A stretch of DNA of 64,000 bases from IMGVR_UViG_3300032334_002567:310001-374000, one strand, 5' to 3'. Shown: positions 648-14,154, counted from the stretch's first letter. Numbers and translations are program-made. Notes: generated by a model not told the origin, from the letters alone.

Positions 648-672
648 TATTTAAATTGTACCCTAACAAAAC

Positions 673-747: not shown

Positions 748-777
748 ACTGATCTTAACCCCAACGGAGATAACCAA

Positions 778-1035: not shown

Positions 1036-1088
1036 ATAAAAATTGTACCCTATAAAGTTGTCCTTCTAACCCCCAACGGAGCTAACTT

Positions 1089-1400: not shown

Positions 1401-1440
1401 TTTGTACCCTAACTCTAACTCTACTCCCAAAGGATTATCT

Positions 1441-2096: not shown

Positions 2097-2098
2097 CA

Positions 2099-2257
2099 AT
2101 GACTAAGCCTTACTTGGTGATCAAAAACAACTGCGCCATTGGTGTTGTTTTTGCTGGGAGTGAAACCGATGCACTCGTTATCGCTTGTGAAGCATATTGC
2201 GATGGCGTGACTGTAGAGTTGAGCCGTCAAAGTGGTCTAAGATCAGTAGGAGTATAA
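2099..2257 (+). CDS. Small hypothetical protein (52 aa)
   Basis: ATG 2099 to TAA 2257 fills the gap between adjacent genes. Confidence 0.5.
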   Translation: MTKPYLVIKNNCAIGVVFAGSETDALVIACEAYCDGVTVELSRQSGLRSVGV

Positions 2258-2260
2258 CCT

Positions 2261-2566
2261 ATGGAATGGATTAGTTTTTTCGGGCCACGTCGTCCAATCA
2301 ACGGACAAAAGATTTTCTATTACGGTGAGTGCATCGGTGTTTGGAGCGGAAATTACAGCTTAGACTGGAATGATCCAGTTAGCCCCCATCGGATAATTTG
2401 TGGGGAAAAAAGCAATGATGAAGTCTTAGCCGAATATGGTTTGAACAATCTGACTATGATTGTAGACCGTATGGATGCACCGTGGTGGATGCCTGACGAG
2501 GGACAGGAAAAGCCCAAAAAGCCAGAAACCGACTACCCAAAGGATTATCCAAGTCGAGAGGGCTAA
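2261..2566 (+). CDS. Hypothetical protein
   Basis: AGGAG RBS; ORF track. Confidence 0.7.
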   Translation: MEWISFFGPRRPINGQKIFYYGECIGVWSGNYSLDWNDPVSPHRIICGEKSNDEVLAEYGLNNLTMIVDRMDAPWWMPDEGQEKPKKPETDYPKDYPSREG

Positions 2567-2654
2567 ATAAAACCATTGTACCCTAAAAGGTCGTTACCCC
2601 ATTTGCACTTGAACGACTAATTCCTAAAATCTAAAATATAAGGGGAGAATAAAA

Positions 2655-2855
2655 ATGCAAAAGTTTATTTTTACAAACGTGAAGATCGAATACTTTGATT
2701 GTGAATGCTGCAAAGGTATGAAACCACCAGCAACCACAGTTTCAGAAGGGCCATTTGAGATAATGGCTCCAATTGGCATCAAACCAGAAAACATCGTAAA
2801 TGAGTTTTTTGGCGAGCCGGGACGAGTCATTGATTTCGAATGTCAAATTACCTAA
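2655..2855 (+). CDS. Hypothetical protein
   Basis: GGGGAG RBS; ORF track. Confidence 0.65.
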   Translation: MQKFIFTNVKIEYFDCECCKGMKPPATTVSEGPFEIMAPIGIKPENIVNEFFGEPGRVIDFECQIT

Positions 2856-2878
2856 TTCATCATTATTGACATTCAAGC

Positions 2879-2912
2879 AGACCCTTGAGATAAATCTCAG
2901 GGGTCTATTTTT
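2879..2912 (+). terminator. Rho-independent terminator
   Basis: AGACCCTTGAGA-TAAA-TCTCAGGGGTCT followed by a T-rich tract. Confidence 0.75.
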
Positions 2913-2935
2913 ATTTGTACCCTAAGGAGAATATC

Positions 2936-3229
2936 ATGTACAAACTATTTATCGATGATGTTCGTGACGCCCCGGATAGCCTCTGGACGGTGTGCAGATC
3001 ATCACATCAGGCTATTGAGCATATCAAGATTTATGGTATGCCAGCCCTTATCAGCTTTGACCATGACTTGGGCGGAGAAGACACCACCATGCTTTTCCTC
3101 CGTAGACTTGTGAACGAGCTTTGGGACGGTAAAACACCACCACCCAATTACAGAGTTCATTCTGCGAATCCTGTTGGCAGCGAAAATATCAAAAGCTTTA
3201 TGGAGAGTTGGAAAAAGTCGATTGAATAA
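2936..3229 (+). CDS. Cyclic-phosphate-processing receiver (cREC-type) domain protein
   Basis: KLFIDDVR, ISFDHDLG and VHSANPVG motifs. Confidence 0.8.
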   Translation: MYKLFIDDVRDAPDSLWTVCRSSHQAIEHIKIYGMPALISFDHDLGGEDTTMLFLRRLVNELWDGKTPPPNYRVHSANPVGSENIKSFMESWKKSIE

Positions 3230-3338
3230 ACTCTAAGGAGAGAGAAATGTCTAAGTTGACTCTTGGCGATAAGATTCTTTTCACTGCGTGTTTTATTGCT
3301 GGCTGTTTTGTTGTTTATCTAATCAACTAAGGAATAAA

Positions 3339-3605
3339 ATGACTGAGCTTTTTACCGACATTGCTATTGTTGTTATGTATCTTGGAACTGCTTTGGCGCT
3401 TTGTGCATTTGTTGGAATTGTTCTTCGGGTTGGTGATTTGGGATTTTGGTGCTTTGGGAAACTTGACGAATATCTGCAAGATAGGCATTTTGAGAAGCTC
3501 AGGAAGTCTTGGGAAAAGAATTGTACCCTAAAAGATTGTTCTAAACCCCAACGGAGTTCTTATGTCAATTCATATAACCAACTTTGTTCGACGCCAGACT
3601 GCTGA
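3339..3605 (+). CDS. Hypothetical membrane protein whose 3' end reads through the repeat at 3519
   Basis: N-terminal hydrophobic helix; AAGGA RBS. Confidence 0.55.
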   Translation: MTELFTDIAIVVMYLGTALALCAFVGIVLRVGDLGFWCFGKLDEYLQDRHFEKLRKSWEKNCTLKDCSKPQRSSYVNSYNQLCSTPDC

Positions 3606-4119
3606 AAGCCATTTCTCGCATTGGACGATCAGTGACGAGGAACTTATCTTTTGTGTTAGCCAGAACATGGACAGGGCTCATAAGGGATACCGGGATGGAG
3701 TTATTCTTGTCCCGATTAGTCCCGAAGGCTTTTTCAGTGCTGTGGCTGAATTGCAGATCAATGACACTCTGAATGGTTCTTTTTCTTGCCGTCGAGCTGG
3801 CGAGGAACCACGAAAAAGTGTCTTTATGATTGGTGAGAAGGTTCCCGCCCAAACAGTCTGGGTTGTTTTATACGCTCATCACGTTCTTGCTGAAAAGAAT
3901 GAAAACGAGAGCGATGCCGATTATGAAATTGTGAGCATCAACACCAGTCCTAGTGTTGATCAAAAGCCTGCTCCTATGCCGCCGGAAACGCTTATTGCTA
4001 ATCACTTTGAGCTTTCTGGGGGAACTGCAACAAATATGACCGATAGCGAGTTTGTTGCATCGCTGCGTGAAAGTGTGATGTATTGGAAAGATAAAGTTCA
4101 GGTTCAGCCTAACCTCTAA
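3562..4119 (+). CDS. DUF3228-family protein
   Basis: GYRDGVILVP, RRAGEEPR, VVLY.HHVL.E.NE, YEIVSIN and PM.PET....GGT motifs. Confidence 0.75.
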   Translation: MSIHITNFVRRQTAESHFSHWTISDEELIFCVSQNMDRAHKGYRDGVILVPISPEGFFSAVAELQINDTLNGSFSCRRAGEEPRKSVFMIGEKVPAQTVWVVLYAHHVLAEKNENESDADYEIVSINTSPSVDQKPAPMPPETLIANHFELSGGTATNMTDSEFVASLRESVMYWKDKVQVQPNL

Positions 4120-4128
4120 AGGAATAAC

Positions 4129-4401
4129 ATGAGAAGCACAACATTGCCTCTTTTTGAAAAGTGGTACGCAACAGCAACACCAGAGCAAATTGAGTTTGTT
4201 GATCAGGTTTATGCTATTTGTGAAGAAAACTACGAAAAGGGTGGAGATAGAATTGTTGAGTGCTATGGGCCAGAGGAAATCATCGAAGATTTCAATACAA
4301 TAGCTGAAGTTCGAGAGCACTGCAATTTGATGGTTGAGCAAGAGCTAAATGCCCGTTGGGGCGAAGATGATGACCCAGAGTTGAGTCGTGGCAAGTGGTG
4401 A
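4129..4401 (+). CDS. Hypothetical acidic protein
   Basis: AAAGGA RBS; ORF track. Confidence 0.75.
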   Translation: MRSTTLPLFEKWYATATPEQIEFVDQVYAICEENYEKGGDRIVECYGPEEIIEDFNTIAEVREHCNLMVEQELNARWGEDDDPELSRGKW

Positions 4402-4459
4402 GTTCTAAATAAATTGTACCCTAACAGGTTGTTCCGAATCACCCCTAACGGAGACAATC

Positions 4460-5023
4460 ATGTCTTACGAGAACGCTCCCCAGACGATTATGCTGGCGAC
4501 CAATTGCTGCTGCTGTGGTCGTCCGCTTTGCGATGCCATCTCTGTTGAGCTTGGTATCGGCCCGGAGTGCCGTGGTGGAAACAACGGTACTCTGACCGAG
4601 GAGCAGCGGCGTGAGTGCAACCAGCTTACACATGCTGCTGCCCTTGCGGCTCAGGAAGGAAAGATCGAAAACGTCCGATGGTGTTCGGAAGCTATTCGTG
4701 AGCTTGGCTTGCCAGAGCTTGCGGATAAGGTGGCTCACCGCTTTGTGAATGCAGAGCGGACGGCGAAGATCACCATTCGGATGGAGGACGGTATGCTCCT
4801 CGTCACTACGCCTTACAAGCGTTCGATGAAGGATGAGTTTACCGCCGCTTGGCGTAATGTCCCCGGTCGGCGGTGGGTTAGCCGGAAGCGGTGCAATGCG
4901 GTGCCTGTGAGCAGCAAGCCCCACTTGTGGGCTTTGCTCAAGCGGTTCTTCCCCGGCGAGTTCGGCATGGGCCCGAATGGGGTGTTCAGGGTTCCTGCCG
5001 AAAGCAAGAACGCCGCCGCATAG
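4460..5023 (+). CDS. DUF6011-like Zn-finger protein, C-terminus ...KNAAA
   Basis: C..CGRPL.D.IS.ELGIGPEC motif. Confidence 0.75.
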   Translation: MSYENAPQTIMLATNCCCCGRPLCDAISVELGIGPECRGGNNGTLTEEQRRECNQLTHAAALAAQEGKIENVRWCSEAIRELGLPELADKVAHRFVNAERTAKITIRMEDGMLLVTTPYKRSMKDEFTAAWRNVPGRRWVSRKRCNAVPVSSKPHLWALLKRFFPGEFGMGPNGVFRVPAESKNAAA

Positions 5024-5027
5024 CATC

Positions 5028-5068
5028 CAAACGGGGCGGGAGTGAAAATAATCCTCCCGCCCCGTTTG
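5028..5068 (+). repeat. GC hairpin (GGGGCGGG family), no U-tract
   Basis: 15-bp perfect stem CAAACGGGGCGGGAG/CTCCCGCCCCGTTTG. Confidence 0.8.
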
Positions 5069-5107
5069 TGATAAGTGATAAATCCCTTTACTCTTCTTTT
5101 GTGAATA

Positions 5108-5281
5108 ATGGAAAATATAAATTCTGTAGATACGATCAAAGAAATTGCAAGCCGTTTTTCTTGTATTCCCTTGAATGATATGACTTTTGCCGAAAAGGAC
5201 GTAGCAAATCTTTTGCTTGAAAAAGGATTTCTAACAATCGGTATAGATCATTGCGGTAAAAGAGTTTTTCATACTCTATAA
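5108..5281 (+). CDS. Small AT-rich hypothetical protein (57 aa)
   Basis: ATG 5108 to TAA 5281, ending just before a repeat copy. Confidence 0.5.
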   Translation: MENINSVDTIKEIASRFSCIPLNDMTFAEKDVANLLLEKGFLTIGIDHCGKRVFHTL

Positions 5282-5329
5282 AATAATTGTACCCTAGAAA
5301 GTTGTTCGATCCCACTCAAAGGAGTTGAC

Positions 5330-5455
5330 ATGGATCCCAACTACGACTTCTTTCTGGACTTCACGCAGGACTTGCAGAACGACGCAGAGTATAACGCTTG
5401 GCTCGACGAGCAGGAGCTTTACTCGCAACAGCAGGAAATGCCCGAAGACTTCTAA
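5330..5455 (+). CDS. Small acidic protein (41 aa)
   Basis: AAAGGAG RBS after the repeat at 5285. Confidence 0.65.
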   Translation: MDPNYDFFLDFTQDLQNDAEYNAWLDEQELYSQQQEMPEDF

Positions 5456-5615
5456 TTTCCTTCTAACCAACGGAGCTTTACCAGTGGTGTAAATACGAGG
5501 TTTTGGCGACAAGAGCCTCATCCAAGTCGCCCTAGGGCAGTCAGGCCACTGTCCTAGATTGTTTTTATTGTACCCTAGTAAGTTGTTCAATCCCAACCAT
5601 CAACCGGAGCTAACC

Positions 5616-5771
5616 ATGACCAGCTTTCTTCTGACTGTGAGCAGCTTTCTCGTTTCTGCCGCCCAAACGCCCTATCTGGACGGCTACTTTGCTGGTGCTG
5701 TGGCTATCGCCGTAACGATTGCGGTGAATGCTATTGTCATTGACTGCATCTACCGCTTCGGTACAAAGTAA
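5616..5771 (+). CDS. Small membrane protein
   Basis: CCGGAG RBS; hydrophobic segment; stop overlaps the next repeat. Confidence 0.65.
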   Translation: MTSFLLTVSSFLVSAAQTPYLDGYFAGAVAIAVTIAVNAIVIDCIYRFGTK

Positions 5772-5819
5772 TTTGTACCCTATAGAAGTGTTCAATCCTA
5801 ACCCCAACGGAGTTTCACG

Positions 5820-6164
5820 ATGAAGTGCATTAGCAATACTTTGGTGATTACTGCCGATATTTGGGAAGATCCGGGTGACTACCCTAATTCCCTTGCCGGT
5901 GGCCCGCTTCCCAGCCACTCTTACATTGAATCCAGCGGTGAACTGGTGCTGGAAGCTGAGAATAACGAGGAACTCGAAAGTTTCGACGCCCTAAACGATT
6001 GGTTCTCTGACTGGATTCATTGTGGTGCAGAGGCCAGCACTATAGGTGCATACGTTGATGTCCCCAGTTATTGGCATATTGACTGGGAGTTCAAAGTGGA
6101 GGGAAACATTCTCACCGTGACGGTCGGTGATGATTGTGAAGCTAACGAGCCAGATTATGATTAA
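5820..6164 (+). CDS. Hypothetical acidic protein
   Basis: Repeat module upstream; stop overlaps the next repeat. Confidence 0.8.
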   Translation: MKCISNTLVITADIWEDPGDYPNSLAGGPLPSHSYIESSGELVLEAENNEELESFDALNDWFSDWIHCGAEASTIGAYVDVPSYWHIDWEFKVEGNILTVTVGDDCEANEPDYD

Positions 6165-6211
6165 TTGTACCCTAACAGGTTGTTCTGATTTCCTCTAAAA
6201 CGGAGAGACAA

Positions 6212-6370
6212 ATGAACTGTTGGAAAAAGGCGTGGAATTGCTGCCTCAAAAACAAGGGCAGTGCAAAGGGCCGCAAAGAACTCAAGCGGGCCAACCATCG
6301 TGCCAACCGCCGTGTCGGTAAGAAGCTGGATAATGTTCACATTCGTCTGAACGGCTGGGACGTTATCTAA
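6212..6370 (+). CDS. Small basic protein (52 aa, MNCWKKAW...)
   Basis: CGGAG RBS; stop abuts the repeat at 6371. Confidence 0.7.
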   Translation: MNCWKKAWNCCLKNKGSAKGRKELKRANHRANRRVGKKLDNVHIRLNGWDVI

Positions 6371-6413
6371 AATTGTACCCTAACAAGTTGTTCGATCCTC
6401 ACCCCAACGGAGA

Positions 6414-6728
6414 ATGACCATGGCAATGTGCGAAGACTTCCCTTGTTGCGGACACGAGCCGGGATGCTGCCCCCGGTTCGATGAGAGCGGTCGGCAGTTG
6501 GATATGGTCTGCACTTGCGGTGCCAGACTGCCGGTTCACAATCGGTACAGTATTTGCGACCGTTGCCTTCGCATGGACGAAGACGGTTGCTATGACGACG
6601 ATTGTGAAACCTACGATGACGATGACTGCGAGGAAGACGACTGTGACGATGCCGATTGCGGTATCGAAGATCAGTTCCTCGACAGTTTCATGGAAGACCG
6701 CCTCAGTGGCGGCTTTTGTGAAGAATGA
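6414..6728 (+). CDS. Cys-rich (Zn-binding?) protein with acidic tail
   Basis: CEDFPCCGH, CTCG and C..C motifs. Confidence 0.75.
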   Translation: MTMAMCEDFPCCGHEPGCCPRFDESGRQLDMVCTCGARLPVHNRYSICDRCLRMDEDGCYDDDCETYDDDDCEEDDCDDADCGIEDQFLDSFMEDRLSGGFCEE

Positions 6729-6781
6729 AACACGGTTGCCGGGGCGGGTTGAGACTAACTCCCCGCCCCGGCCCGTTGGGG
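6729..6781 (+). repeat. AACACGG-GC hairpin-CCGTTGGGG element (copy A)
   Basis: Near-identical to the elements at 9689 and 11937. Confidence 0.85.
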
Positions 6782-6803
6782 CTTTCAAACAAGGAGACAA
6801 GTA

Positions 6804-7019
6804 ATGTCTGTATATTTCAACAAGCAAATGGCTAATCTTATCAACGTCTATGTCAAGTGTCCTACCAGTGGTCGAACGCTGGACGCAGATAGGCACGATG
6901 ACAAAGTATTGTGCAACTGCCCAGAGGCTATGAGCCGGGGCGGTACCCATATTGTTTCAAAGTGTGAACCGTCAACGGTCGAACAGTTCATGGTAGAAAA
7001 CAATTTTACAGAGAACTAA
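6804..7019 (+). CDS. Small Cys-containing hypothetical protein
   Basis: AGGAG RBS; ORF track. Confidence 0.7.
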   Translation: MSVYFNKQMANLINVYVKCPTSGRTLDADRHDDKVLCNCPEAMSRGGTHIVSKCEPSTVEQFMVENNFTEN

Positions 7020-7028
7020 AACCCACCT

Positions 7029-7066
7029 TAGGGTACAAATAAAGTAATTAAAATAATTGTACCCTA
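7029..7066. repeat. Inverted pair TAGGGTACAA-N18-TTGTACCCTA
   Basis: Direct reading of the sequence. Confidence 0.9.
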
Positions 7067-7102
7067 GAAAAGTGTTCGATAACCCCCAACGGAGAATCCC
7101 TC

Positions 7103-7333
7103 ATGCCAGTCGAAGTTCACACCAGCGGTTCTGTTTCTTATACCGGTGAAGACGGCGTAGCTCTTTTCCGTCTCATTACTCTTCACTCTGCCCTGCGCCT
7201 TCAGGCCACCACCGGCATGAAAGCGTCAAGGATCAGTGCTGTGGCTTGTGCCAAGCGACTTGGCTATACAGGCCGCACCGCAAAGGCTCTGCTTGCAGAC
7301 ATCGAACGGAAGCACCCTGAGCTGAAGAAGTAA
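7103..7333 (+). CDS. Hypothetical protein
   Basis: Repeat module upstream; stop overlaps the next repeat. Confidence 0.8.
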   Translation: MPVEVHTSGSVSYTGEDGVALFRLITLHSALRLQATTGMKASRISAVACAKRLGYTGRTAKALLADIERKHPELKK

Positions 7334-7378
7334 ATTGTACCCTAGTTAATCGTTCGACACCCCCAACAAGAGGATGCA

Positions 7379-7582
7379 ATGAGTAACATCGAAGACAAGA
7401 TGGAAGCAATCGAAAAGTGGCGCAATGACAATTTGTGCTTTCTCGACGGCCAGCCTGCAAAGATTGTGGGTTGGAAAGAAAAGTTTCCAATCGTGAGCCA
7501 AATCGACGGCCCTCTTGCTTTTGAGTGGTCGTGGGCCGCTGTCAACAGGATCATGTCCGGTGATCGACAGTTCAAGAGCTAG
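7379..7582 (+). CDS. Hypothetical protein
   Basis: Repeat module and GAGGA RBS. Confidence 0.8.
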   Translation: MSNIEDKMEAIEKWRNDNLCFLDGQPAKIVGWKEKFPIVSQIDGPLAFEWSWAAVNRIMSGDRQFKS

Positions 7583-7624
7583 ATCATTTGTACCCTATTA
7601 AAGCGTTCAACACCCCAACGGAGA

Positions 7625-7957
7625 ATGATCATGGAATACACCGAAGCCCTCAAAGTTCTTGGCAAGCGTGATTCGAAGAAAGTCGGAAACAACACCTACA
7701 TGATCCGGCTGGGTTCGGACATCGGTATTCGACTTCACAACACCGTTGTGGTGACCATCCATCCCGACAATACCTACACACTCAATAGCGGTGGATGGCA
7801 GACAGTGACAACAAAGGATCGGATCAACCAGTATTCACCGGTTCGTGTGTATCAATCAAAAAGCGTTTGGTATGTCGGTCAAGGCGAGCTGTTTTACGAC
7901 AACATGAAAGTCGGTGTCGTTTGCGGTGAGCCGCTAGCTTTAGGAATTGTACCCTAG
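7625..7957 (+). CDS. Hypothetical phage protein (TLNSGGW.T.TTK.RIN motif); stop TAG lies inside the repeat
   Basis: Repeat module upstream; 3' end reads GGAATTGTACCCTAG. Confidence 0.8.
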   Translation: MIMEYTEALKVLGKRDSKKVGNNTYMIRLGSDIGIRLHNTVVVTIHPDNTYTLNSGGWQTVTTKDRINQYSPVRVYQSKSVWYVGQGELFYDNMKVGVVCGEPLALGIVP

Positions 7958-7996
7958 TAGGTTGTGTAACCACCCCCAACGGAGTTGTGAAAAAAC

Positions 7997-8278
7997 ATGA
8001 TGAACTACAGCGGTTGTAACAGCTGGATCTACATCTACGCCATCGGTGGCAATTGGAACCCCGGCCCCAGCGGTGACGAGTTCGTGGGCTGTGCCTACGA
8101 CGCCTCCACTGCCCTCAGCCTGCTCGACTTGGTCGAGTTGAAGGGTGGCTATGCCGTCAGCCTGCACGGTGACAACCTGCATACGCTCAATGCCGTCAGC
8201 GGCGAGTGTGGTGTGCGGGAAGCCCGTATCATGTTCAAGCTCTGGAAAGAGAAAGAGGCGGTCGTTGTCGCTGGGTAA
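7997..8278 (+). CDS. Hypothetical protein
   Basis: Repeat module upstream. Confidence 0.75.
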   Translation: MMNYSGCNSWIYIYAIGGNWNPGPSGDEFVGCAYDASTALSLLDLVELKGGYAVSLHGDNLHTLNAVSGECGVREARIMFKLWKEKEAVVVAG

Positions 8279-8331
8279 CAATAAATAAATTGTACCCTAA
8301 AAGAGTGTTCGATCCCAACGGAGAAGCGATC

Positions 8332-8475
8332 ATGGAAATTAAATTCAACTTCAAAACACGTCAGTACGACGTTTGCATCACATTCTTCGACGGCAGAACC
8401 CCCATAAATGTTTGCTCTTTCTACAAAGAGTCGGATGCTCGCGCCTACGTCATGGTTCACAATGTCAAGTGTTAG
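8332..8475 (+). CDS. Small hypothetical protein (47 aa)
   Basis: CCAACGGAGAAGCGATCATG leader. Confidence 0.7.
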   Translation: MEIKFNFKTRQYDVCITFFDGRTPINVCSFYKESDARAYVMVHNVKC

Positions 8476-8534
8476 ATTCAATAAATAAATTGTACCCTGA
8501 CAGAGTGTTCGATCCACCCCAACGGAGTTTTGAA

Positions 8535-8687
8535 ATGACCGAAAACGAAATCAATGTTCTGGAAGAGGCCGCATCGCACATTCGAAACGATGCTTACAAC
8601 TGCGATAGCAGTCTGGATCGCAAGTATTTCGAAAAGCTTGCCGATAAGATCGAAGACATTATCGCCAAGCATAATCAAAGCAAATAA
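8535..8687 (+). CDS. Small hypothetical protein (50 aa)
   Basis: Repeat module upstream; stop overlaps the next repeat. Confidence 0.7.
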   Translation: MTENEINVLEEAASHIRNDAYNCDSSLDRKYFEKLADKIEDIIAKHNQSK

Positions 8688-8736
8688 ATTGTACCCTAGA
8701 TGATTGTTCGATTCACACCCCAACGGAGAAGCGATC

Positions 8737-9117
8737 ATGGCAAGCTGGTACACCGTCAGCGAGAGCAAGATTCAGTGGGCTCCCATCGGCACCCGTGTTC
8801 TGAAGACTGGCGAGACTAAGCCGAAGTTTTCCCGGATCGGCGTCCGTATCAATATGGTGGACGGTAGCTGGTGGTTCCACAGCTTCAAGCACGATAGCTG
8901 GACGCAACACTATCCCCGGAAGCAGGCCACCGACAAGCTGGGACGGCCCATTTTCGAGGATGGTCAGCCGCTCCTGCGACCGGAACGCAAGGAAACCTAC
9001 CGCAACTGGATGGCGGTTGTGAGAGAGTTCGGCACTCGACTGCCCGCTCTGGTTGTCGCTCTGGAAAACGGTCACGCCGAAGCTCTGCTAGCCGAAGCAG
9101 AGAAAACGGCAGCGTAA
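8737..9117 (+). CDS. Hypothetical protein, C-terminus ...EKTAA
   Basis: Leader CCAACGGAGAAGCGATCATGG, shared with the gene at 8332. Confidence 0.8.
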   Translation: MASWYTVSESKIQWAPIGTRVLKTGETKPKFSRIGVRINMVDGSWWFHSFKHDSWTQHYPRKQATDKLGRPIFEDGQPLLRPERKETYRNWMAVVREFGTRLPALVVALENGHAEALLAEAEKTAA

Positions 9118-9190
9118 AACGTGTGCTAGGGGCGGCAAGGCTCTACGGCCAAAAGCCGCGAAACTGCTAGCCGCCCCTAGCCCGTTGGGG
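9118..9190 (+). repeat. GC hairpin-CCGTTGGGG element (divergent copy D)
   Basis: GCTAGGGGCGGC ... GCCGCCCCTAGC stem, then CCGTTGGGG. Confidence 0.75.
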
Positions 9191-9253
9191 TACTTATAAA
9201 TAATTGTACCCTAAAAGTGTGTTGCGAACGCCCCTCTTTTTCAAGGATGAAAA

Positions 9254-9424
9254 ATGTACGCTCTGACGATGATCATAGGTTTTCTTGGCTACGGGTTCGG
9301 GTACGAGGGTTGTGAAAAAGGAAAGATATATTTCGGCGTGTATACCCCCAAAGCCGAATATGGTTGGGTCATGACAGAAAAAGACGTTTATCTGGATACC
9401 GTGTACCAGAAAACTTCTAAATAA
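9254..9424 (+). CDS. Small hypothetical protein (56 aa)
   Basis: AAGGA RBS; stop overlaps the next repeat. Confidence 0.6.
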   Translation: MYALTMIIGFLGYGFGYEGCEKGKIYFGVYTPKAEYGWVMTEKDVYLDTVYQKTSK

Positions 9425-9465
9425 ATTGTACCCTAGTTGATTGTTCGATCCAACCCCAACGGAGA

Positions 9466-9690
9466 ATGACAATGCCAAATATCAACTGGTTCGACGGTCA
9501 GAATGCGGTTGGCAAGTACGTTATGGAACTCATGTACGACGACGGTAGCGTCAGCTACATGAAAAATGAGAACTACGAGCAGATTTGCCACTACTACCGG
9601 CTTGCTTTGGAAATGTCGGAAGTGGTGGGTGCGACCATCTACAACCCAAAGTGGCAAGTAGTTTGCTCGACAGCACGGGCCGCAGCGTGA
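9466..9690 (+). CDS. Hypothetical protein, C-terminus ...ARAAA
   Basis: Repeat module upstream. Confidence 0.8.
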   Translation: MTMPNINWFDGQNAVGKYVMELMYDDGSVSYMKNENYEQICHYYRLALEMSEVVGATIYNPKWQVVCSTARAAA

Positions 9691-9770
9691 ACACGGTTGC
9701 CTGGGCGGGTTGAGACAAAACTCCCCGCCCTGGCCTGTTAGGGTATTTATATTGTACCCTATAGAAGTGT
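9678..9770 (+). repeat. About 90-bp linker (Ala-Ala-Ala-stop, hairpin, repeat core), near-identical to 11926..12024
   Basis: GGCCGCAGCGTGAACACGGTTGCC(T/G)GGGCGGGT...TTTATATTGTACCCTATAGAAGTGT in both copies. Confidence 0.9.
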
Positions 9771-9796
9771 CAGCCACCCCAAACACAGGAGCCAAT

Positions 9797-9958
9797 ATGA
9801 GCAATAACGAAAAACCGTACTGCTTCGAAGAAGCCCGTTTCAAGCGTGAAATGGAATACGTGGCTCGTAAGCTCAAAGAGGCGTTGGAACTCAAGGAATA
9901 CGCCAAACAACTGGCAAAAGAAAAAGAACAAAAAGAGAAAGAGGAAAGCCGGGACTAA
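9797..9958 (+). CDS. Small charged coiled-coil protein
   Basis: AGGAG RBS after the repeat at 9750. Confidence 0.7.
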   Translation: MSNNEKPYCFEEARFKREMEYVARKLKEALELKEYAKQLAKEKEQKEKEESRD

Positions 9959-9987
9959 CACCCCCGGTTCTCTTTTTTAGTCGGCCA

Positions 9988-10033
9988 TAGGGTACAAATA
10001 AAATAAAAAGGGATATACAATAATTGTACCCTA
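9988..10033. repeat. Inverted pair TAGGGTACAA-N26-TTGTACCCTA
   Basis: Direct reading of the sequence. Confidence 0.9.
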
Positions 10034-10040
10034 TAACAGT

Positions 10041-10155
10041 GTGAATGATTGCGAGGCCGCACCATCGGCACTACTGTCCGGTTGCAAACGGCAGTAACTC
10101 GCGGGAGCGGTATGCCGAAAGGCAGCGAGTGGTGCACCCCATCGCAATCGTTCAC
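10041..10155 (+). ncRNA. Structured ncRNA (~115 nt) occupying its own unit of the array
   Basis: 14-bp closing stem 10041-10054/10142-10155; GCACCA/TGGTGC; hairpin 10072-10096; CTCGC/GCGAG; TGCC-GAAA-GGCA; no RBS or ORF between two repeat copies. Confidence 0.75.
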
Positions 10156-10209
10156 AACAAAACAATTGTACCCTAGAAAAGTGTTCGATTCACCCCAACG
10201 GAGACGATC

Positions 10210-10545
10210 ATGACTTTCGTCAACCTGACCCCGCACACGATCACTGTGGTTCTCGACAATACCAGCGTGCAATTCCCGGCTTCTGGCAACGTGGCCCGTG
10301 TTTCCACCAGTCGAGTCTCTGGCCCCACGCTAACCGTCTACGGCGATTCTGTCGGTATCCAGACTTCCCGTGTCGAGTTCGGGGCAGTCGAGGGGCTTCC
10401 CGATCCCGTGGACGGCACGGTTTACATTGTGAGCGGAATGGTCGCAGCCCGTGTCAACCGGCCCGACGTTTTCGCTCCCGGTGAACTGGTGCGTGATGCA
10501 AACGGCCAGCCCACCGGCTGCAAGGGTCTGACTTGCAGCGGTTGA
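10210..10545 (+). CDS. Hypothetical phage protein (VNLTPH.I N-terminus)
   Basis: Repeat module upstream; N-terminal motif I recall from phage hypothetical proteins. Confidence 0.8.
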   Translation: MTFVNLTPHTITVVLDNTSVQFPASGNVARVSTSRVSGPTLTVYGDSVGIQTSRVEFGAVEGLPDPVDGTVYIVSGMVAARVNRPDVFAPGELVRDANGQPTGCKGLTCSG

Positions 10546-10602
10546 TTATTATAATTGTACCCTATAGAAGTGTTCGATCCCAACCCCAACGGAGACTCAC
10601 GA

Positions 10603-11043
10603 ATGAACGACATTCTTCTCGCCGCCCTGACCAGCTGCTTCAGCAAGATGGCAAAGGCCGCTGGCCCGATTGCCCCCGGCCTGCACCAGGTCGATGAAAC
10701 GATCACGATGCGGGTCAAGGGCGAGGTGCTGAAGTCGGACGACGAAACCTACGTCCCGACGATTGCGATTCCCGTCAAGGCCGTGATGGCTACGTTGCTC
10801 CCCCGGTTGGGTGCGACACGGGAGGCTGCGATGGAAACGCTTATCGCCGCCATGACTGAAGCGGTCAATCTGGACAAGCTGGGCGATGAAACGCTCAAAG
10901 CCCGGATGAAAGACGTTGACGCGGCTTTCGAGCATGTGCAGAACGTGCTCGACGCCCTCCCGCCAAAGACACGGACGGGAAAGACGAACGTGGACGTGAC
11001 CCTTGTGGTCGCTCCCACGCCCGCCGTCGCACTTGTCCCGTGA
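10603..11043 (+). CDS. Hypothetical protein
   Basis: CCCCAACGGAG then ATG 10603. Confidence 0.8.
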   Translation: MNDILLAALTSCFSKMAKAAGPIAPGLHQVDETITMRVKGEVLKSDDETYVPTIAIPVKAVMATLLPRLGATREAAMETLIAAMTEAVNLDKLGDETLKARMKDVDAAFEHVQNVLDALPPKTRTGKTNVDVTLVVAPTPAVALVP

Positions 11044-11045
11044 CG

Positions 11046-11098
11046 ATACGGCATCGGGGGCGGGAGGAACTAACAACTCCCGCCCCCACTAGCCGTTT
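11046..11098 (+). repeat. GC hairpin (GGGGCGGGAG/CTCCCGCCCC; copy E)
   Basis: Same stem family as 5028 and 6729. Confidence 0.75.
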
Positions 11099-11152
11099 GT
11101 GCAATTGTACCCTATTGGTTTGTGTGATTCGTCCCTTTACTTTGGAGCAGTT

Positions 11153-11335
11153 ATGGAAGCGAAAATCGAGAACGGCTTTCTGGTTCTGCGAGTCCCGATG
11201 AATGCAACGCCGATTCGTTCGTCTACCGGCAAGACTTTGGTGGTTGCCTCGACCTATGGCAACAAGGCAACCGAAGTGACGGTGGACGGCAAGACGGTCA
11301 CCGTGGGCGTCAACGCCTATATCAAGGCCGCTTGA
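11153..11335 (+). CDS. Small conserved beta-rich protein (S.TGKTLVVAST.GN), C-terminus ...YIKAA
   Basis: GGAG RBS; ATG 11153. Confidence 0.8.
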   Translation: MEAKIENGFLVLRVPMNATPIRSSTGKTLVVASTYGNKATEVTVDGKTVTVGVNAYIKAA

Positions 11336-11356
11336 CCCCAACGGTTCGGATCGAAA

Positions 11357-11393
11357 GCCGGAGGGGACAGCCACCCCCTCCGGTTCTTTTTTT
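11357..11393 (+). terminator. Rho-independent terminator, repeated at 12470
   Basis: CCGGAGGGG-ACAGCCAC-CCCCTCCGG followed by TTCTTTTTTT. Confidence 0.85.
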
Positions 11394-11402
11394 AGCCCGC
11401 CA

Positions 11403-11439
11403 TAGGGTACAAATAAATATATAAAATAATTGTACCCTA
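11403..11439. repeat. Inverted pair TAGGGTACAA-N17-TTGTACCCTA
   Basis: Direct reading of the sequence. Confidence 0.9.
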
Positions 11440-11482
11440 GATAAGTGTTCGATCTAACCTTCCCTCTCACTTGGAGTCAACG

Positions 11483-11551
11483 ATGATCGCTCTCGTTCTC
11501 GCGTTTGGCCTTGGTTTCGCCGCCATTTCTGCCGTTTACTGGGTGCTGTAA
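11483..11551 (+). CDS. 22-aa single-helix membrane peptide (MIALVLAFGLGFAAISAVYWVL)
   Basis: TTGGAG RBS inside its own repeat-bounded unit. Confidence 0.55.
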   Translation: MIALVLAFGLGFAAISAVYWVL

Positions 11552-11644
11552 AGCTCCCAGTCTAACACCTGAGTGATTAGGGTATAAAGTAATTGTACCC
11601 TAGATAAGTGTTCGATCCGATCCCACCCCAACCGGAGACGCACG

Positions 11645-11938
11645 ATGAAGAACGCTTTCGACCGCACGAACAGCATGAAGAACAAGCTCAAGGCCGATTG
11701 GAACCGGATGGTGGGGGAACTGGTGTCCATCCCCGCCGGTTGCCAGATTCACAGCCTGACGCTCACGCAGACCAACTTCGGTTGGGTCTACGCCCGGAAG
11801 CACGGCCAGCCCGTGCCGGTCGCCCAGTTGCGGAACGCCGCCGTGACGAAGGGTTACTGTATCCTGCACGACGGCCCCAACTTCCGGGTGGCCCTCCCGC
11901 CGAAGCGGAACGGGGAGCCGGTCAAGGCCGCAGCGTGA
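11645..11938 (+). CDS. Hypothetical protein, C-terminus ...VKAAA
   Basis: Repeat module upstream. Confidence 0.8.
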   Translation: MKNAFDRTNSMKNKLKADWNRMVGELVSIPAGCQIHSLTLTQTNFGWVYARKHGQPVPVAQLRNAAVTKGYCILHDGPNFRVALPPKRNGEPVKAAA

Positions 11939-12024
11939 ACACGGTTGCCGGGGCGGGTCGAGACTAACTCCCCGCCCCGGCCCCGTTGGGGTACTTGTAT
12001 TTATATTGTACCCTATAGAAGTGT
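11926..12024 (+). repeat. Linker copy C (Ala-Ala-Ala-stop, hairpin, repeat core)
   Basis: Near-identical to 9678..9770. Confidence 0.9.
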
Positions 12025-12054
12025 TCGATCCCCACCCCCAACCGGAGCCGCCCC

Positions 12055-12444
12055 ATGTTGAATGAAGCGTTCTTTCAGGTGTGCAACGATGCCGTCCCCG
12101 CAAAGTCCAGCTACGTCTCGCTCTACGTCAACGTGCCGTACTACGGTGGGCCGGAGGAAGGTGGATGGTGGGGCAGTGACACCGCACTAGTCGCTCACTA
12201 CAAGTGTGACAGCCAGCCCCATGCCGAAGCTGTGAAGGCCCGTGTCGAGGAGCTGGCCCAGCAGTTGAGCGACGATGCCCGCCGGTCGTTTGGTCAAGCC
12301 TGCAAGGCCCAGTGTGAATGGCTGGACGCACGTGGGTTGGACGCCGACTACCTGCCCGAAGTGGACGGGGAGGAAACCTACTGGGTCGCCGTCGAGGATC
12401 GCCCCGGTGAACACGCCAGCCAAGGGTGCAGGCACTACGAATAA
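12055..12444 (+). CDS. Hypothetical phage protein (YGGPEEGGWW motif)
   Basis: Repeat module upstream; stop abuts the next repeat. Confidence 0.8.
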   Translation: MLNEAFFQVCNDAVPAKSSYVSLYVNVPYYGGPEEGGWWGSDTALVAHYKCDSQPHAEAVKARVEELAQQLSDDARRSFGQACKAQCEWLDARGLDADYLPEVDGEETYWVAVEDRPGEHASQGCRHYE

Positions 12445-12469
12445 AATTGTACCCTATCAAGCACACCGA

Positions 12470-12504
12470 CCGGAGGGGACAGCCAACCCTCCGGCTTTCT
12501 TTTC
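12470..12504 (+). terminator. Rho-independent terminator, paralogue of 11357
   Basis: CCGGAGGG-GACAGCCAA-CCCTCCGG followed by CTTTCTTTT. Confidence 0.8.
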
Positions 12505-12513
12505 AGCCCGCCA

Positions 12514-12552
12514 TTGGGTACAAATAAAGTAATACATAATAATTGTACCCTA
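12514..12552. repeat. Inverted pair TTGGGTACAA-N19-TTGTACCCTA
   Basis: Direct reading of the sequence. Confidence 0.85.
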
Positions 12553-12699
12553 GTAATATACAGGAGGGTATTACAAAGATAATAATACAGAAATAAAAAG
12601 CGAAAACCTTTTAAAAAAATTGTACCCTAGGTACCCTCCCCCCCGCAATTACTGTCTTATTTTTTAAGTCGTCCTGACTTTTTTTCCCGTATTAGCACC

Positions 12700-12768
12700 G
12701 TTGCAAAATCCCGGTTACAAACGTTGCAAAATCCCGGTTACAAACGTTGCAAAATACCAGTTACAAAA
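12700..12768 (+). repeat. Three tandem 23-bp repeats GTTGCAAAAT(C/A)CC(G/A)GTTACAAA(C/A)
   Basis: Copies start at 12700, 12723 and 12746. Confidence 0.9.
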
Positions 12769-13182
12769 TTTTGGCCCTAGTAATTCTTTATTTTCTCCAT
12801 ATGGGCTTAAGATTTTAATATTGATGACATCTTTAAAAAATCCAGCCAAAAAATTCCATAAAATTCTATTACAAATTTTGGCCCCAACAATTCTTCGTTC
12901 TATGCCGTATAAATAAATTAGGCAAAATGGAGTGCCTCTAAAAAAATGCGGCACGAAATTTTTAACGAAGGAGTGTTATGGATTATTATTCTATAAGTGG
13001 ATTGGCAGTAATTACATCAATTATTTGGTTGTTTTGCTATTGTGTAAAAATAACAATGGACAATAACGAATAGACCCCCTAGACAAAACCTACTCTTCTG
13101 GTAAGATGTCCCGTAAGGAGATCACAAAGAAGTTCTCTAGGAGAAAAAATGAAAGTCAAAAGCAGGTAGTGTTCTTACTAAA

Positions 13183-13365
13183 ATGATAGCAAAACTTATT
13201 TTAGCTTTTTTGCTGATTATAACCATTCTTGTTGGTTATAGTTCTATTCAAGCTGTTGCAGAACCTACAAAAGTAGAGAAAAAAGTAGAAGACAAATCGA
13301 AATGTTTTTGTAATGGATTAAGTTTGCCCCAAGAGCGTCAGTGTCCAACAATGAACGATTTGTGA
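13183..13365 (+). CDS. Small exported/membrane protein
   Basis: N-terminal hydrophobic signal. Confidence 0.55.
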   Translation: MIAKLILAFLLIITILVGYSSIQAVAEPTKVEKKVEDKSKCFCNGLSLPQERQCPTMNDL

Positions 13366-13595
13366 GATTCTTCATGGCATGGAATATCCCAGAAATTAAA
13401 AAATGGGCAAAGAACCATAAAATAGAAGTTAAATTAGACAAAGAGTCTAAAAAATACAGATGGACAATAGATGATAAAGTAAGTGAACTTTTATCTATAG
13501 ATGATTTAGTCCCTCAGGTATTTAACTTTTTAACGGACAACAAGTACGTTCAGCATCAGGAAGAATATAGGAACAAAAAAGACACTAAATTATAA
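13341..13595 (+). CDS. Hypothetical protein
   Basis: ORF track. Confidence 0.6.
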   Translation: MSNNERFVRFFMAWNIPEIKKWAKNHKIEVKLDKESKKYRWTIDDKVSELLSIDDLVPQVFNFLTDNKYVQHQEEYRNKKDTKL

Positions 13596-13611
13596 CATAT
13601 ATAAAATTGTT

Positions 13612-14154
13612 ATGTTATTTTTTAGAAGTTTTATTTGTTTTAGGTTAAATGGGAAAATAAATTCAAAAACAGTTAGTGAATTTGAAGAAATACTTTCAAA
13701 TTGTTTAAAAACAAAACAAAATATACTTCCTATAGTAATAAACTCAACAGGAGGTTGTGCTTATTCTTTAGTATCTTTATATGAAAAAATTAAAAAATCA
13801 AAAATAAAAGTAGCAACAATAGTTGAGCACAAAGCATTATCAGCAGCGGCATTTCTTCTGTCTTGTGGCAATCAAGGATACAGATATATGGCCAAAGAAG
13901 CAGTTGTTATGATACATGATGCACATTCAGCGGATTTAAAACCAGACTTAAAAGAAATAGAAAGAATTAATAGCGTATTATACAACATATTAGAAAACAA
14001 CTCTAATAAAAAAAACAACTTTTTTAAGAACATAATGCAAGACAATAAATGTTCAGATCTATATCTAAATGCTGAACAATGTCTCAAATATAAAATTATT
14101 GATTTTATTGGAATTCCTATAATTAAATCAATAATAGAAAAAGAATATTCATAG
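13612..14154 (+). CDS. clpP: ClpP-like protease subunit
   Basis: INSTGG, KALSAAAFLLSCG (catalytic Ser) and VMIHD (His) motifs; DLYLNAEQCLKY.IID tail. Confidence 0.85.
   Translation: MLFFRSFICFRLNGKINSKTVSEFEEILSNCLKTKQNILPIVINSTGGCAYSLVSLYEKIKKSKIKVATIVEHKALSAAAFLLSCGNQGYRYMAKEAVVMIHDAHSADLKPDLKEIERINSVLYNILENNSNKKNNFFKNIMQDNKCSDLYLNAEQCLKYKIIDFIGIPIIKSIIEKEYS

What the first reader, a model, noticed from the sequence alone, without database searches (positions are those of the whole stretch)
4460..14154. Built-in C-terminal Ala-Ala degrons on array proteins, with a phage ClpP next door
Seen: five unrelated array proteins end in AA: 4460..5023 (KNAAA), 8737..9117 (EKTAA), 9466..9690 (ARAAA), 11153..11335 (YIKAA) and 11645..11938 (VKAAA). 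None of the ~50 ORFs after 13 kb does. A ClpP-like gene lies about 1 kb past the array end. Established: C-terminal Ala-Ala is the ClpX-recognised end of the ssrA tag. Inference: these early effectors are programmed for rapid turnover, possibly helped by the phage ClpP. Caveat: GC-rich genes use more Ala, and phage ClpP-like proteins can have other roles.
Basis: partly seen in the sequence, partly recalled or inferred. Interest (0 to 1): 0.75.

Follow-up and report, generated by a model that had tools for sequence, protein, structure and literature searches.

The report
Ala-Ala tails in a huge phage
A clade of huge freshwater phages ends many of its small "array" proteins, and its own ClpX unfoldase, in Ala-Ala, the end that ClpX proteases read as a destruction tag, which suggests that these viruses time the removal of their own proteins.

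Summary
All five ORFs end in Ala-Ala, and no gene after 13 kb in the window does.

The window is part of a 381-kb phage record from lake metagenomes. Its array is about 50 kb long. It holds 9 AA-ended genes out of about 100, against 0.5-0.6 expected from each gene's own Ala content (P about 1e-8). Among array genes with GC of at least 0.50, 8 of 25 end in AA.

- **Replication:** the excess recurs in the arrays of three relatives, whose promoter-like motifs differ. It is absent in control contigs.
- **Protein-level signal:** Ala codons vary, and in two families homologues with different tails still end in AA (48/114 and 22/34).
- **New context:** the phage encodes a true ClpX that keeps every residue known to contact Ala-Ala-COO- and the ClpP-docking loop. 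It also has two divergent ClpP-like genes. ClpX itself ends in AA in all four clade members examined.

So "built-in ssrA-like degrons" is the best reading, but it is not shown. No degradation data exist, the upstream tail residues are not ideal, the neighbouring ClpP-like gene is an unassignable diverged paralogue whose position is not conserved, and "early effectors" is an assumption. Two or three of the five cases are weak on their own.

The parts
1..12650 (+). 3' quarter of a roughly 50-kb one-directional array of small genes. Each gene or small group is preceded by the motif AATTGTACCCTA-N6-TGTTCGATCC..CCCCAACGGAGA-ATG. GC is 0.43-0.57, against about 0.35 for the rest of the phage.
   Evidence: Repeat families D1-D11. 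There are 72 + strand copies between genome positions 272,015 and 322,620. GC profile.
4460..5023 (+). DUF6011-family protein of 187 aa, ending ..FRVPAESKNAAA. The folded core ends at FRVP, followed by an 8-residue tail.
   Evidence: Pfam DUF6011, 2.9e-9. Of 114 homologues, 48 end in AA. In their tails Ala is 74% at position -1, 64% at -2 and about 10% at -3 to -8. In the model the last 7 residues have pLDDT of about 55 or less. The Mx1 homologue stops at FQIP with no tail.
8737..9117 (+). 126-aa protein with an Ala/Glu-rich C-terminal helix, ending ..AEAEKTAA.
   Evidence: Of 7 homologues only the nearest (96% identical) ends in AA. The others end EE, EA, ES or KA. This is a weak case that may be compositional.
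9466..9690 (+). 74-aa protein ending ..CSTARAAA. It belongs to a family with a conserved [KR]-x(1-4)-AA end.
   Evidence: Of 34 small homologues, taken as representatives at 50% identity or less, 22 end in AA, 4 in VA and 2 in AG.
11153..11335 (+). 60-aa protein ending ..GVNAYIKAA.
   Evidence: Seven homologues in other, smaller phage contigs end AYIKR, AYIK, AYIQK, AYIKAD, AYIKI or AYIKKD. None ends in AA. The AA is specific to this phage's copy.
11645..11938 (+). 97-aa protein ending ..GEPVKAAA.
   Evidence: The only homologue found is 90% identical and also ends KAAA.
9678..9753 (+). Terminator-type GC-rich hairpin repeat whose 5' edge covers the last codons GCC GCA GCG TGA of ORF 9466-9690.
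   Evidence: Repeat D17, 82% identical to 11926-12001. Sequence shown. Contigs from other lakes join 9690 to 11938.
11926..12001 (+). Second copy of the same terminator repeat, covering the last codons of ORF 11645-11938.
   Evidence: A third copy at 6729-6781 starts after the stop of an ORF that ends ..CEE, so the repeat does not always supply AAA.
13612..14154 (+). ClpP-superfamily serine protease of 180 aa. The Ser-His-Asp triad is kept and the N-terminal about 20 residues of ClpP are missing or divergent. It is a diverged paralogue of a second ClpP-like gene at genome 88,644-89,246.
   Evidence: Pfam CLP_protease, 5.7e-19. Alignment to H. pylori ClpP shows the catalytic Ser, His and Asp columns kept. 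NCBIfam scores: ClpP subfamily model 63.9 bits against a cut-off of 249, ClpP equivalog TIGR00493 54.7 against 308.6, and head-maturation model 51 against 120. It is 43% identical to the 88-kb copy, which is the closer match to the single copy in LR756511.

Best explanation
The Ala-Ala-COOH ends are a selected, protein-level C-terminal signal used by a clade of huge freshwater phages. It sits mainly on small proteins encoded in their promoter-studded gene arrays, and also on the phage's own ClpX.

The signal is most likely an ssrA-like degron. An exposed tail ending in Ala-Ala enters the axial pore of ClpX, either the phage-encoded ClpX or the host's. [quoted passage not shown] The protein is then unfolded and fed to a ClpP peptidase, either the host's or one or both phage ClpP-like proteins.

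Tagged proteins would therefore be short-lived, and the AA-tagged phage ClpX would limit itself.

**Shown here:** the enrichment, its replication in relatives, conservation of the AA end in protein families, and the presence and intact recognition residues of ClpX.

**Inferred:** that ClpX reads these tails, that the proteins are degraded, which ClpP acts, and that the array is expressed early.
For: 1. **Enrichment.** There are 9 AA ends in 105 array genes against 0.5-0.6 expected (P about 1e-8). Among genes with GC of at least 0.50 the count is 8 of 25. Outside the array it is 2 of 348.
2. **Replication with the same caller and the same null model.**
   - The G2 array has 7 of 77 against 0.45 expected (P = 3e-7).
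   - The LR756511 array has 5 of 30 against 0.20 expected (P = 1e-6).
   - The L008 array has 6 AA ends among the 15 database-called genes of its array stretch.
   - Control contigs have 8 of 552 against 6.5 expected.
3. **The signal is in the protein, not the DNA.**
   - Ala codons and stop codons vary.
   - Of 15 occurrences of GCNGCN followed by a stop triplet on the array's + strand, 9 are true gene ends. The - strand has 8 occurrences.
4. **Family conservation despite variable tails.**
   - DUF6011 family: 48 of 114 homologues end in AA, and Ala is enriched only at positions -1 and -2.
   - The 9466 family: 22 of 34 end in AA.
   - A winged-helix family: three homologues in the G2 array all end in AA after unrelated tails.
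   - A pair of paralogues both end PRKAA.
5. **A true ClpX in the genome.**
   - It has the zf-C4_ClpX, AAA_2 and D2-small domains. Its NCBIfam equivalog score is 559 bits against a cut-off of 359, and its E-value to solved ClpX structures is 2e-131.
   - Aligned to E. coli ClpX it keeps Y153, V154, T199, V202, R228 and H230, the residues that contact Ala-Ala-COO- (PMC7652416), and the IGF loop.
6. **ClpX itself carries the tail.** It ends in AA in 4 of 4 clade members and in 0 of 4 other phage ClpX proteins.
7. **The tail is exposed.** The tail of the DUF6011 model has low confidence while the core is confident.
8. **Published support.** A random C-terminal tag screen in E. coli found terminal Ala-Ala in 91% of the top 100 degrons, and these depended on ClpXP (PMC10862746).
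Against: - Nothing here measures stability, and no transcript data were available.
- In E. coli, terminal Ala-Ala is necessary but not sufficient. Leu and other hydrophobic residues upstream help, and short polar residues at -3 hurt (PMC10862746). Here position -3 is mostly E, K, T or A, and Leu is rare.
- One relative, G1, has ClpX with an AA tail but only 2-3 AA ends among 127 array genes.
- Two of the five ends share a terminator repeat.
- The 8737 and 11153 families do not conserve AA.
- Both ClpP-like proteins are too diverged to be called ClpP.
- It is not known whether AA-tailed homologues elsewhere come from phages that encode ClpX.
Confidence: 0.55

Rival explanations
1. The AA tails do bind ClpX, but their purpose is not to remove the carrier. 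Many abundant AA-tailed proteins could act as competitors that saturate host ClpXP, for example to spare other phage proteins or to block protease-triggered defences. Alternatively the tail could recruit ClpX as an unfoldase or remodeller without ClpP.
For: - Many different proteins carry the tail at once.
- ClpX itself carries it in 4 of 4 clade members, which is odd for a plain substrate tag.
- The upstream residues look sub-optimal for fast degradation (PMC10862746).
- The ClpP-like partners are diverged.
Against: - Nothing here points to competition specifically.
- The same data fit simple turnover.
- The tagged proteins include regulator-like types: winged helix, AT-hook-like, a sigma-like factor in G1, and AAA+ ATPases. 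Timed removal is the classic logic for such proteins.
Confidence: 0.15
2. The AA-COOH end is read by something other than ClpX. Candidates are another host protease that accepts ssrA-like ends (ClpAP, FtsH, Lon, tail-specific protease) or an unknown phage protein that binds C-terminal peptides. In the second case the tail would be a localisation or assembly signal.
For: - Several E. coli proteases accept ssrA tags (stated in PMC10862746).
- In the DUF6011 family another group of homologues carries a different C-terminal peptide, Q-x-x-L-x-L-[GAV], which resembles clamp-binding peptides. The C-end of that family therefore acts as a swappable docking module.
Against: - In the unbiased E. coli screen, strong short C-terminal degrons depended on ClpXP (PMC10862746).
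- The phage clade carries ClpX with intact Ala-Ala contact residues.
- No SspB and no tmRNA are encoded in the phage.
Confidence: 0.15
3. The AA ends have no function. They come from Ala-rich composition of high-GC cassettes, low-complexity Ala/Glu tails, hitch-hiking with a duplicated terminator repeat, and shared ancestry.
For: - All AA-ended array genes have GC of 0.49-0.64.
- The 8737 family has Ala/Glu-rich tails with varied ends.
- The ends at 9690 and 11938 share repeat D17.
- Two upstream genes are paralogues.
Against: - Per-gene composition predicts 0.6 AA ends, not 9. In the high-GC subset it predicts 0.26, not 8.
- High-GC control contigs show no excess, 8 against 6.5 expected.
- Ala is raised only at the last two positions.
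- Diverse homologues keep AA behind tails that do not align.
- The excess recurs in three other arrays.
Confidence: 0.05
4. The ClpP-like gene next to the array has nothing to do with the AA tails. It would be a head-maturation or other processing protease, and its nearness to the array is coincidence.
For: - The best PHROG hits are head maturation proteases.
- It scores below the ClpP cut-offs.
- It lacks the N-terminal segment of ClpP.
- The position of ClpP-like genes relative to the array differs in G1, G3 and LR756511.
- It is a diverged duplicate of the copy at 88 kb.
Against: - It also scores below the cut-off for ClpP-related head protease, 51 bits against 120.
- At 180 aa it has no scaffold or capsid fusion.
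- Its neighbours are not recognisable head genes.
- The catalytic triad is intact.
- The genome has a ClpX that needs a peptidase partner.
Confidence: 0.4

Closest known systems
ssrA tag and ssrA-like built-in ClpX degrons (ClpX C-motif 1; e.g. substrates ending in Ala-Ala)
   Same: - Both have a free C-terminal Ala-Ala on an exposed tail.
   Different: - The tails are gene-encoded, not added by tmRNA, and the phage has no tmRNA.
- Position -3 is mostly E, K, T or A instead of Leu.
- The upstream residues are often basic.
- Degradation is untested.
ssrA-like C-terminal tags on integrase and repressor of mycobacteriophages with integration-dependent immunity (Broussard et al. 2013, as described in PMC9635641)
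   Same: [quoted passage not shown]
- A Clp-type host protease then sets the level of a phage regulator.
   Different: - There the tags sit on two proteins of a lysogeny switch in small temperate phages.
- Here dozens of unrelated small proteins of a gene array are tagged in huge phages, apparently lytic.
- The phage's own ClpX is tagged as well.
ClpX, ClpP and other Clp genes annotated in jumbo phages (phage G gp257/gp258, Atu_ph07, Lak phages; PMC6102473, PMC7824862)
   Same: - This phage also carries a ClpX equivalog and ClpP-family genes.
   Different: - In those reports the role was left open: virion assembly, replication or host takeover. No substrate signal was linked to the genes.
- In this clade ClpX ends in AA in 4 of 4 members. 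In phage G, Phosso, Lak-B2 and MD-2021a it does not.
- In phage G clpP and clpX are adjacent. Here they are far apart.
C-terminal Ala-Ala of CtrA and other ClpXP substrates of Caulobacter (from my own knowledge, not checked here)
   Same: - Regulators carry a gene-encoded terminal AA that is needed for timed ClpXP proteolysis.
   Different: - That system belongs to the cell cycle and uses adaptors.
- No adaptor such as SspB was found in the phage.

Membership tests
ssrA-like C-terminal ClpX degron | Free C-terminal Ala-Ala | tested here: met
   Nine array proteins, including all five of the finding, and the phage ClpX end in AA.
ssrA-like C-terminal ClpX degron | Exposed, unstructured tail of about 5 or more residues before the end | tested here: inconclusive
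   Only the DUF6011 protein was modelled. Its core is confident up to about residue 178 and its last 7 residues have pLDDT of about 55 or less. The other proteins were not modelled.
ssrA-like C-terminal ClpX degron | Favourable upstream residues (Leu at -3, hydrophobic or Arg further upstream; PMC10862746) | tested here: not met
   Position -3 is A, T, A, K and A in the five cases, and E or K in the others. Arg or Lys is common at -3 to -5. Leu at -3 occurs only in relatives, for example L008 ..RRKLAA.
ssrA-like C-terminal ClpX degron | ClpX-dependent degradation that is lost when AA is changed to DD | not testable with these tools
   This needs half-life or in-vitro degradation assays.
[quoted passage not shown] | C4 zinc finger, AAA+ module and small domain; score above the curated equivalog cut-off | tested here: met
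   Pfam finds zf-C4_ClpX, AAA_2 and ClpB_D2-small. NF003745 scores 559 bits against a cut-off of 359, and TIGR00382 scores 545 against 371.
[quoted passage not shown] | Pore-1 GYVG, pore-2 and RKH loops, and the IGF loop for ClpP docking | tested here: met
   Alignment to E. coli ClpX (8e91) shows Y153, V154, T199, V202, R228, H230 and IGF 268-270 all kept. The GYVG, RKH and IGF motifs are also present in the G1, G2 and LR756511 ClpX. The exact pore-2 pattern matched in G0, G2 and LR756511 but not in G1.
ClpP (proteolytic subunit of ATP-dependent Clp protease) | ClpP fold with Ser-His-Asp triad | tested here: met
   Pfam CLP_protease, 5.7e-19. The triad columns are kept in the alignment to H. 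pylori ClpP and its S-to-A mutant.
ClpP (proteolytic subunit of ATP-dependent Clp protease) | Score above the curated ClpP cut-off; N-terminal axial loops | tested here: not met
   TIGR00493 scores 54.7 bits against a cut-off of 308.6. The alignment starts at ClpP residue 33, so the N-terminal segment is missing or unlike.
ClpP (proteolytic subunit of ATP-dependent Clp protease) | Binds ClpX | tested here: inconclusive
   The complex prediction gave no verdict.
ClpP-related phage head maturation protease | Score above the curated cut-off; gene next to portal, scaffold or capsid genes, or fused to them | tested here: not met
   NF045542 scores 51 bits against a cut-off of 120. The protein is a stand-alone 180 aa. 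Its neighbours are array genes and glycosyltransferase-like genes, and no head genes are recognisable. The head genes of this phage were not located.

The most novel reading that the evidence does not exclude
A clade of huge freshwater phages runs its own proteolytic timer. The proposed circuit has three parts.
- A virus-encoded ClpX works with virus ClpP-like subunits or with host ClpP.
- It clears a large and shifting set of array-encoded proteins that carry gene-encoded Ala-Ala tags.
- The ClpX carries the same tag, so the system shuts itself off.

Newly captured cassettes would acquire the tag. The 60-aa protein at 11153-11335 fits this, because its homologues in other phages lack the tag.
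Probability: 0.3. Interest if true: 0.85.

Novelty: new variant of a known kind. Interest (0 to 1): 0.72.

Why it matters
Phages are known to time gene expression mainly through transcription. A genome-wide, gene-encoded degradation tag, together with a virus-encoded reader, would add programmed protein removal to that picture for huge phages.

It would give the ClpX and ClpP genes of jumbo phages, whose role has been open, a defined set of substrates. It would also offer a simple sequence mark, the AA-COOH end, for picking out short-lived regulators and host-takeover proteins among thousands of unknown small phage genes.

The idea is directly testable with AA-to-DD variants and purified ClpXP.

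Tried and rejected
- **Near-identity DNA searches.** Searching the array and the 4404-aa gene against GenBank phages found nothing.
- **Exact-pattern scan of IMG/VR for the array motif.** It found only the same phage again (L002 and L005, 100% identical) and three chance hits with no shared proteins.
- **First gene callers.** The length-greedy callers picked antisense shadow ORFs in the high-GC array and missed 4460-5023 and 11645-11938. They were replaced by a + strand caller weighted by ribosome-binding site and motif.
- **Sigma-70 promoter and intrinsic terminator scans of 4-14.5 kb.** These were uninformative: 20 promoter-like sites against 12 in shuffles, and 14 terminator-like sites against 12.7.
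- **Fold search of the DUF6011 model against the PDB.** No match reached E of 0.001 or better. This gives no support to the "capsid decoration protein" label of the Mx1 homologue, but it does not test it.
- **Complex prediction.** Three copies of the ClpP-like protein with the ClpX AAA+ module gave no verdict, neither for nor against binding.
- **RNA runs.** None was listed.
- **DNA-level explanation.** A conserved GCNGCN-stop element, or a terminator stem reaching into the ORF, was considered and rejected as a general cause. It holds only for the pair at 9690 and 11938.
- **Other checks.** No tmRNA and no SspB are encoded in the phage. A Pfam search for a T4-type prohead protease found nothing, but its control also failed, so it says nothing.

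Full report
**What the window is.** The window is positions 310,001-374,000 of a 381,443-bp IMG/VR virus record that CheckV estimates to be 79% complete. It holds baseplate genes and a 4404-aa ORF, so this is a huge tailed phage. Runs that share its DNA are lake and freshwater metagenomes.

The nearest GenBank record is the uncultured 595-kb phage LR756511.1. Its baseplate protein is 46% identical and its ClpX 53% identical. No cultured relative was found and the host is unknown.

**The array.** The "array" of the finding is the last quarter of a roughly 50-kb region, genome positions 272,000-322,650.
- It holds 72 + strand copies of the motif AATTGTACCCTA-N6-TGTTCGATCC..CCCCAACGGAGA-ATG, placed in front of small genes.
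- GC is 0.41-0.49 and reaches 0.64 in single genes, against about 0.35 for the rest of the genome.
- Relatives have the same layout with a different motif. G1 (459 kb) uses GATACCAACTAG, 83 copies. LR756511 uses AAAGCTGTAC, 34 copies. L008 uses GGGACACC. L012 uses AATTGTATT.

**Checking the observation.** All five ORFs and their AA ends are as described. Each follows a motif copy and a Shine-Dalgarno site. BLASTP finds no similarity among them. No gene between 12.7 and 64 kb ends in AA. The ClpP-like ORF 13612-14154 is real.

**Statistics.** With the whole genome laid out, I called array genes on the + strand using ribosome-binding site and motif. For each gene the expected chance of an AA end was taken from that gene's own Ala content.

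| Set | AA ends / genes | Expected | P |
|---|---|---|---|
| Array | 9 / 105 | 0.61 (0.53 from internal AA dipeptides) | 1e-8 to 2e-9 |
| Array genes with GC of at least 0.50 | 8 / 25 | 0.26 | about 1e-10 |
| Non-array | 2 / 348 | 1.0 | not significant |

AA is the commonest C-terminal dipeptide in the array.

Two corrections for non-independence apply. The ends at 9690 and 11938 share the last 10 bases and a terminator repeat (D17). Two upstream genes ending PRKAA are paralogues, 47% identical. About seven independent events remain against 0.6 expected.

**Is it DNA or protein?** The evidence points to protein.
- The Ala codons differ (GCT, GCC, GCA and GCG in varied order). The stops differ (TGA seven times, TAG once, TAA once). 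The downstream sequences also differ.
- The pattern GCNGCN followed by a stop triplet occurs 15 times on the array's + strand. Nine of these are true gene ends. The - strand has 8 occurrences.
- So the excess is tied to reading frames.

**Replication.** The same caller and the same null model were applied to relatives and controls.

| Genome | Array: AA ends / genes (expected; P) | Rest: AA ends / genes (expected; P) |
|---|---|---|
| G2 (204 kb) | 7 / 77 (0.45; P = 3e-7) | 5 / 184 (0.54; P = 2e-4) |
| LR756511 | 5 / 30 (0.20; P = 1e-6) | 11 / 730 (3.6; P = 1e-3) |
| G1 | 2-3 / 127 (0.59; not significant) | 4 / 389 (0.86; P = 0.01) |

In the Logan contig L008, six of the 15 database-called genes of the array stretch end in AA (KKAA, AKAA, EAAA, AKAA, KAAA, KLAA).

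The control was 23 contigs that carry only distant homologues of one array gene, mostly at 55-70% GC. They gave 8 of 552 against 6.5 expected. The null model is therefore calibrated, and GC alone does not produce the effect.

**Conservation in families.**
1. **DUF6011 family (4460-5023).** Of 114 homologues, 48 end in AA. After the conserved core end F-R-I-P the tails vary from 1 to over 20 residues in length and also in sequence (KSAA, KQDEAA, GDKKKKAA, NEKKTESEAA and others). Ala is 74% at position -1, 64% at -2 and 7-17% at -3 to -8. The Myxococcus phage Mx1 homologue stops at FQIP with no tail.
2. **The 9466 family.** Of 34 small homologues, taken as representatives at 50% identity or less, 22 end in AA, 4 in VA and 2 in AG, usually after K or R.
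3. **A winged-helix family (genome 298754-299023).** Three homologues in the G2 array align only over the N-terminal 55-61 residues, yet all end in AA.
4. **A RuvB-like ATPase.** AA is present in 2 of 4 homologues.
5. **The 8737 family.** Only the nearest homologue keeps AA. The tails are Ala/Glu-rich.
6. **The 11153 family.** Seven homologues in other, smaller phages end at or just after AYIK. None ends in AA.
7. **The 11645 protein.** Only a 90%-identical homologue was found.

Thus two of the five cases are strongly supported as carrying a conserved signal. One looks like a lineage-specific gain, one is untestable, and one is weak.

**The Clp machinery.** The genome encodes a true ClpX at 194,772-196,031.
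- It has the zf-C4_ClpX, AAA_2 and D2-small domains.
- It scores above the NCBIfam equivalog cut-offs.
- Its E-value to solved ClpX structures is 2e-131.
- Aligned to E. coli ClpX, it keeps Y153 and V154 (pore-1), T199 and V202 (pore-2), and R228 and H230 (RKH loop). It also keeps the IGF loop.
- These six residues are the ones that contact the Ala-Ala-COO- of the ssrA tag (PMC7652416).

ClpX is present in the two near-complete relatives, at 57% identity, and in LR756511. All four end in AA..AKNKAA..NKNEAA..IFKKAA and ..EASEAA. ClpX of phage G, Phosso, Lak-B2 and MD-2021a does not.

There are two ClpP-like genes, at 88,644-89,246 and at window 13612-14154.
- The window copy keeps the catalytic triad.
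- Both copies score far below the cut-offs for ClpP and for ClpP-related head protease.
- The window copy is the more diverged paralogue.
- The position of ClpP-like genes relative to the array is not conserved in relatives.
- No SspB and no tmRNA are encoded.

**Reading.** The simplest account is that AA-COOH is an ssrA-like degron read by ClpX. Terminal Ala-Ala is the dominant determinant of strong short C-terminal degrons in E. coli, and those degrons depend on ClpXP (PMC10862746).

The DUF6011 model has a confident core and a low-confidence tail. The tagged proteins with a recognisable type are regulator-like or ATPases:
- a winged-helix protein;
- AT-hook-like proteins;
- a RuvB-like ATPase and a MoxR-like ATPase;
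- a sigma-like factor in G1;
- ClpX itself.

Against this reading, the same screen shows that Ala-Ala alone is not sufficient and that the upstream residues matter. Here position -3 is rarely Leu. Nothing in these data measures stability or the time of expression.

**What is known.** Gene-encoded ssrA-like tags on phage proteins are known for the integrase and repressor of some mycobacteriophages (PMC9635641). ClpX and ClpP genes have been noted in jumbo phages without a defined role or substrates (PMC6102473, PMC7824862). My searches found no report of a clade-wide excess of AA ends on phage array proteins, or of AA-tagged phage ClpX. That is an absence in the searched library, not proof of novelty.

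**Verdict.** The degron idea is the best explanation at about 0.55. The link to the neighbouring ClpP-like gene is weak, and the more telling partner is the phage ClpX. This is a new variant of a known kind.

Noticed in passing
window 7631-7957 and 10603-11043; genome 303493-304413 and 308113-308322: Five array ORFs end in ..(I/L)VP. Several visibly run into the next promoter-like motif and stop at its TAG or TAA (ATT GTA CCC TAG). Here the repeat DNA sets the protein end.
   Followed up: partly
window 1-12650; G1 283-359 kb; G2 120-170 kb: GC in the array rises towards its 3' end (genes at 0.56-0.64 in window 10-12.4 kb), then falls to about 0.33 within a few hundred bases. G1 and G2 show the same gradient. 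This suggests that newer, foreign cassettes sit at one end.
   Followed up: partly
window 7000-12600: Contigs from other lakes join cassettes at the repeats (7077 to 10199, 7956 to 8717, 9690 to 11938). They hold only 5-58% of the words of this stretch. Array content therefore differs between populations, through recombination at promoter and terminator repeats.
   Followed up: partly
window 564-648; genome 284552-294209: tRNA genes lie inside the array: Leu(CAA) in the window, and Glu, Gln, Arg and Leu(TAA) upstream.
   Followed up: no
genome 211741 and 211843-212859 (outside the window): A copy of the array motif lies about 100 bases upstream of a gene outside the array. That gene's C-terminal part matches a Sigma70_r2 protein of G1 that ends in KQRAAA. 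It is a candidate for the factor that reads the array promoters.
   Followed up: partly
window 12692-12767: Three tandem 23-base repeats (TTACAAACGTTGCAAAATCCCGG) lie between the end of the array and the ClpP-like gene.
   Followed up: no
window 38024-51238: A single 4404-aa ORF with no Pfam match lies just upstream of the baseplate genes.
   Followed up: no
homologues of window 4460-5023 (P0001-P0114): A subgroup of DUF6011-family homologues carries a 14-residue tail, Q-x-x-L-x-L-[GAV], instead of the AA tail. It resembles beta-clamp-binding peptides, so the C-end of this family looks like an exchangeable docking peptide.
   Followed up: no
L129 6001-6519 (Myxococcus phage Mx1, OR576727.2): The Mx1 homologue of the DUF6011 protein is annotated as a capsid decoration protein. 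The model of the window's protein has no PDB fold match, so the label could not be checked.
   Followed up: partly
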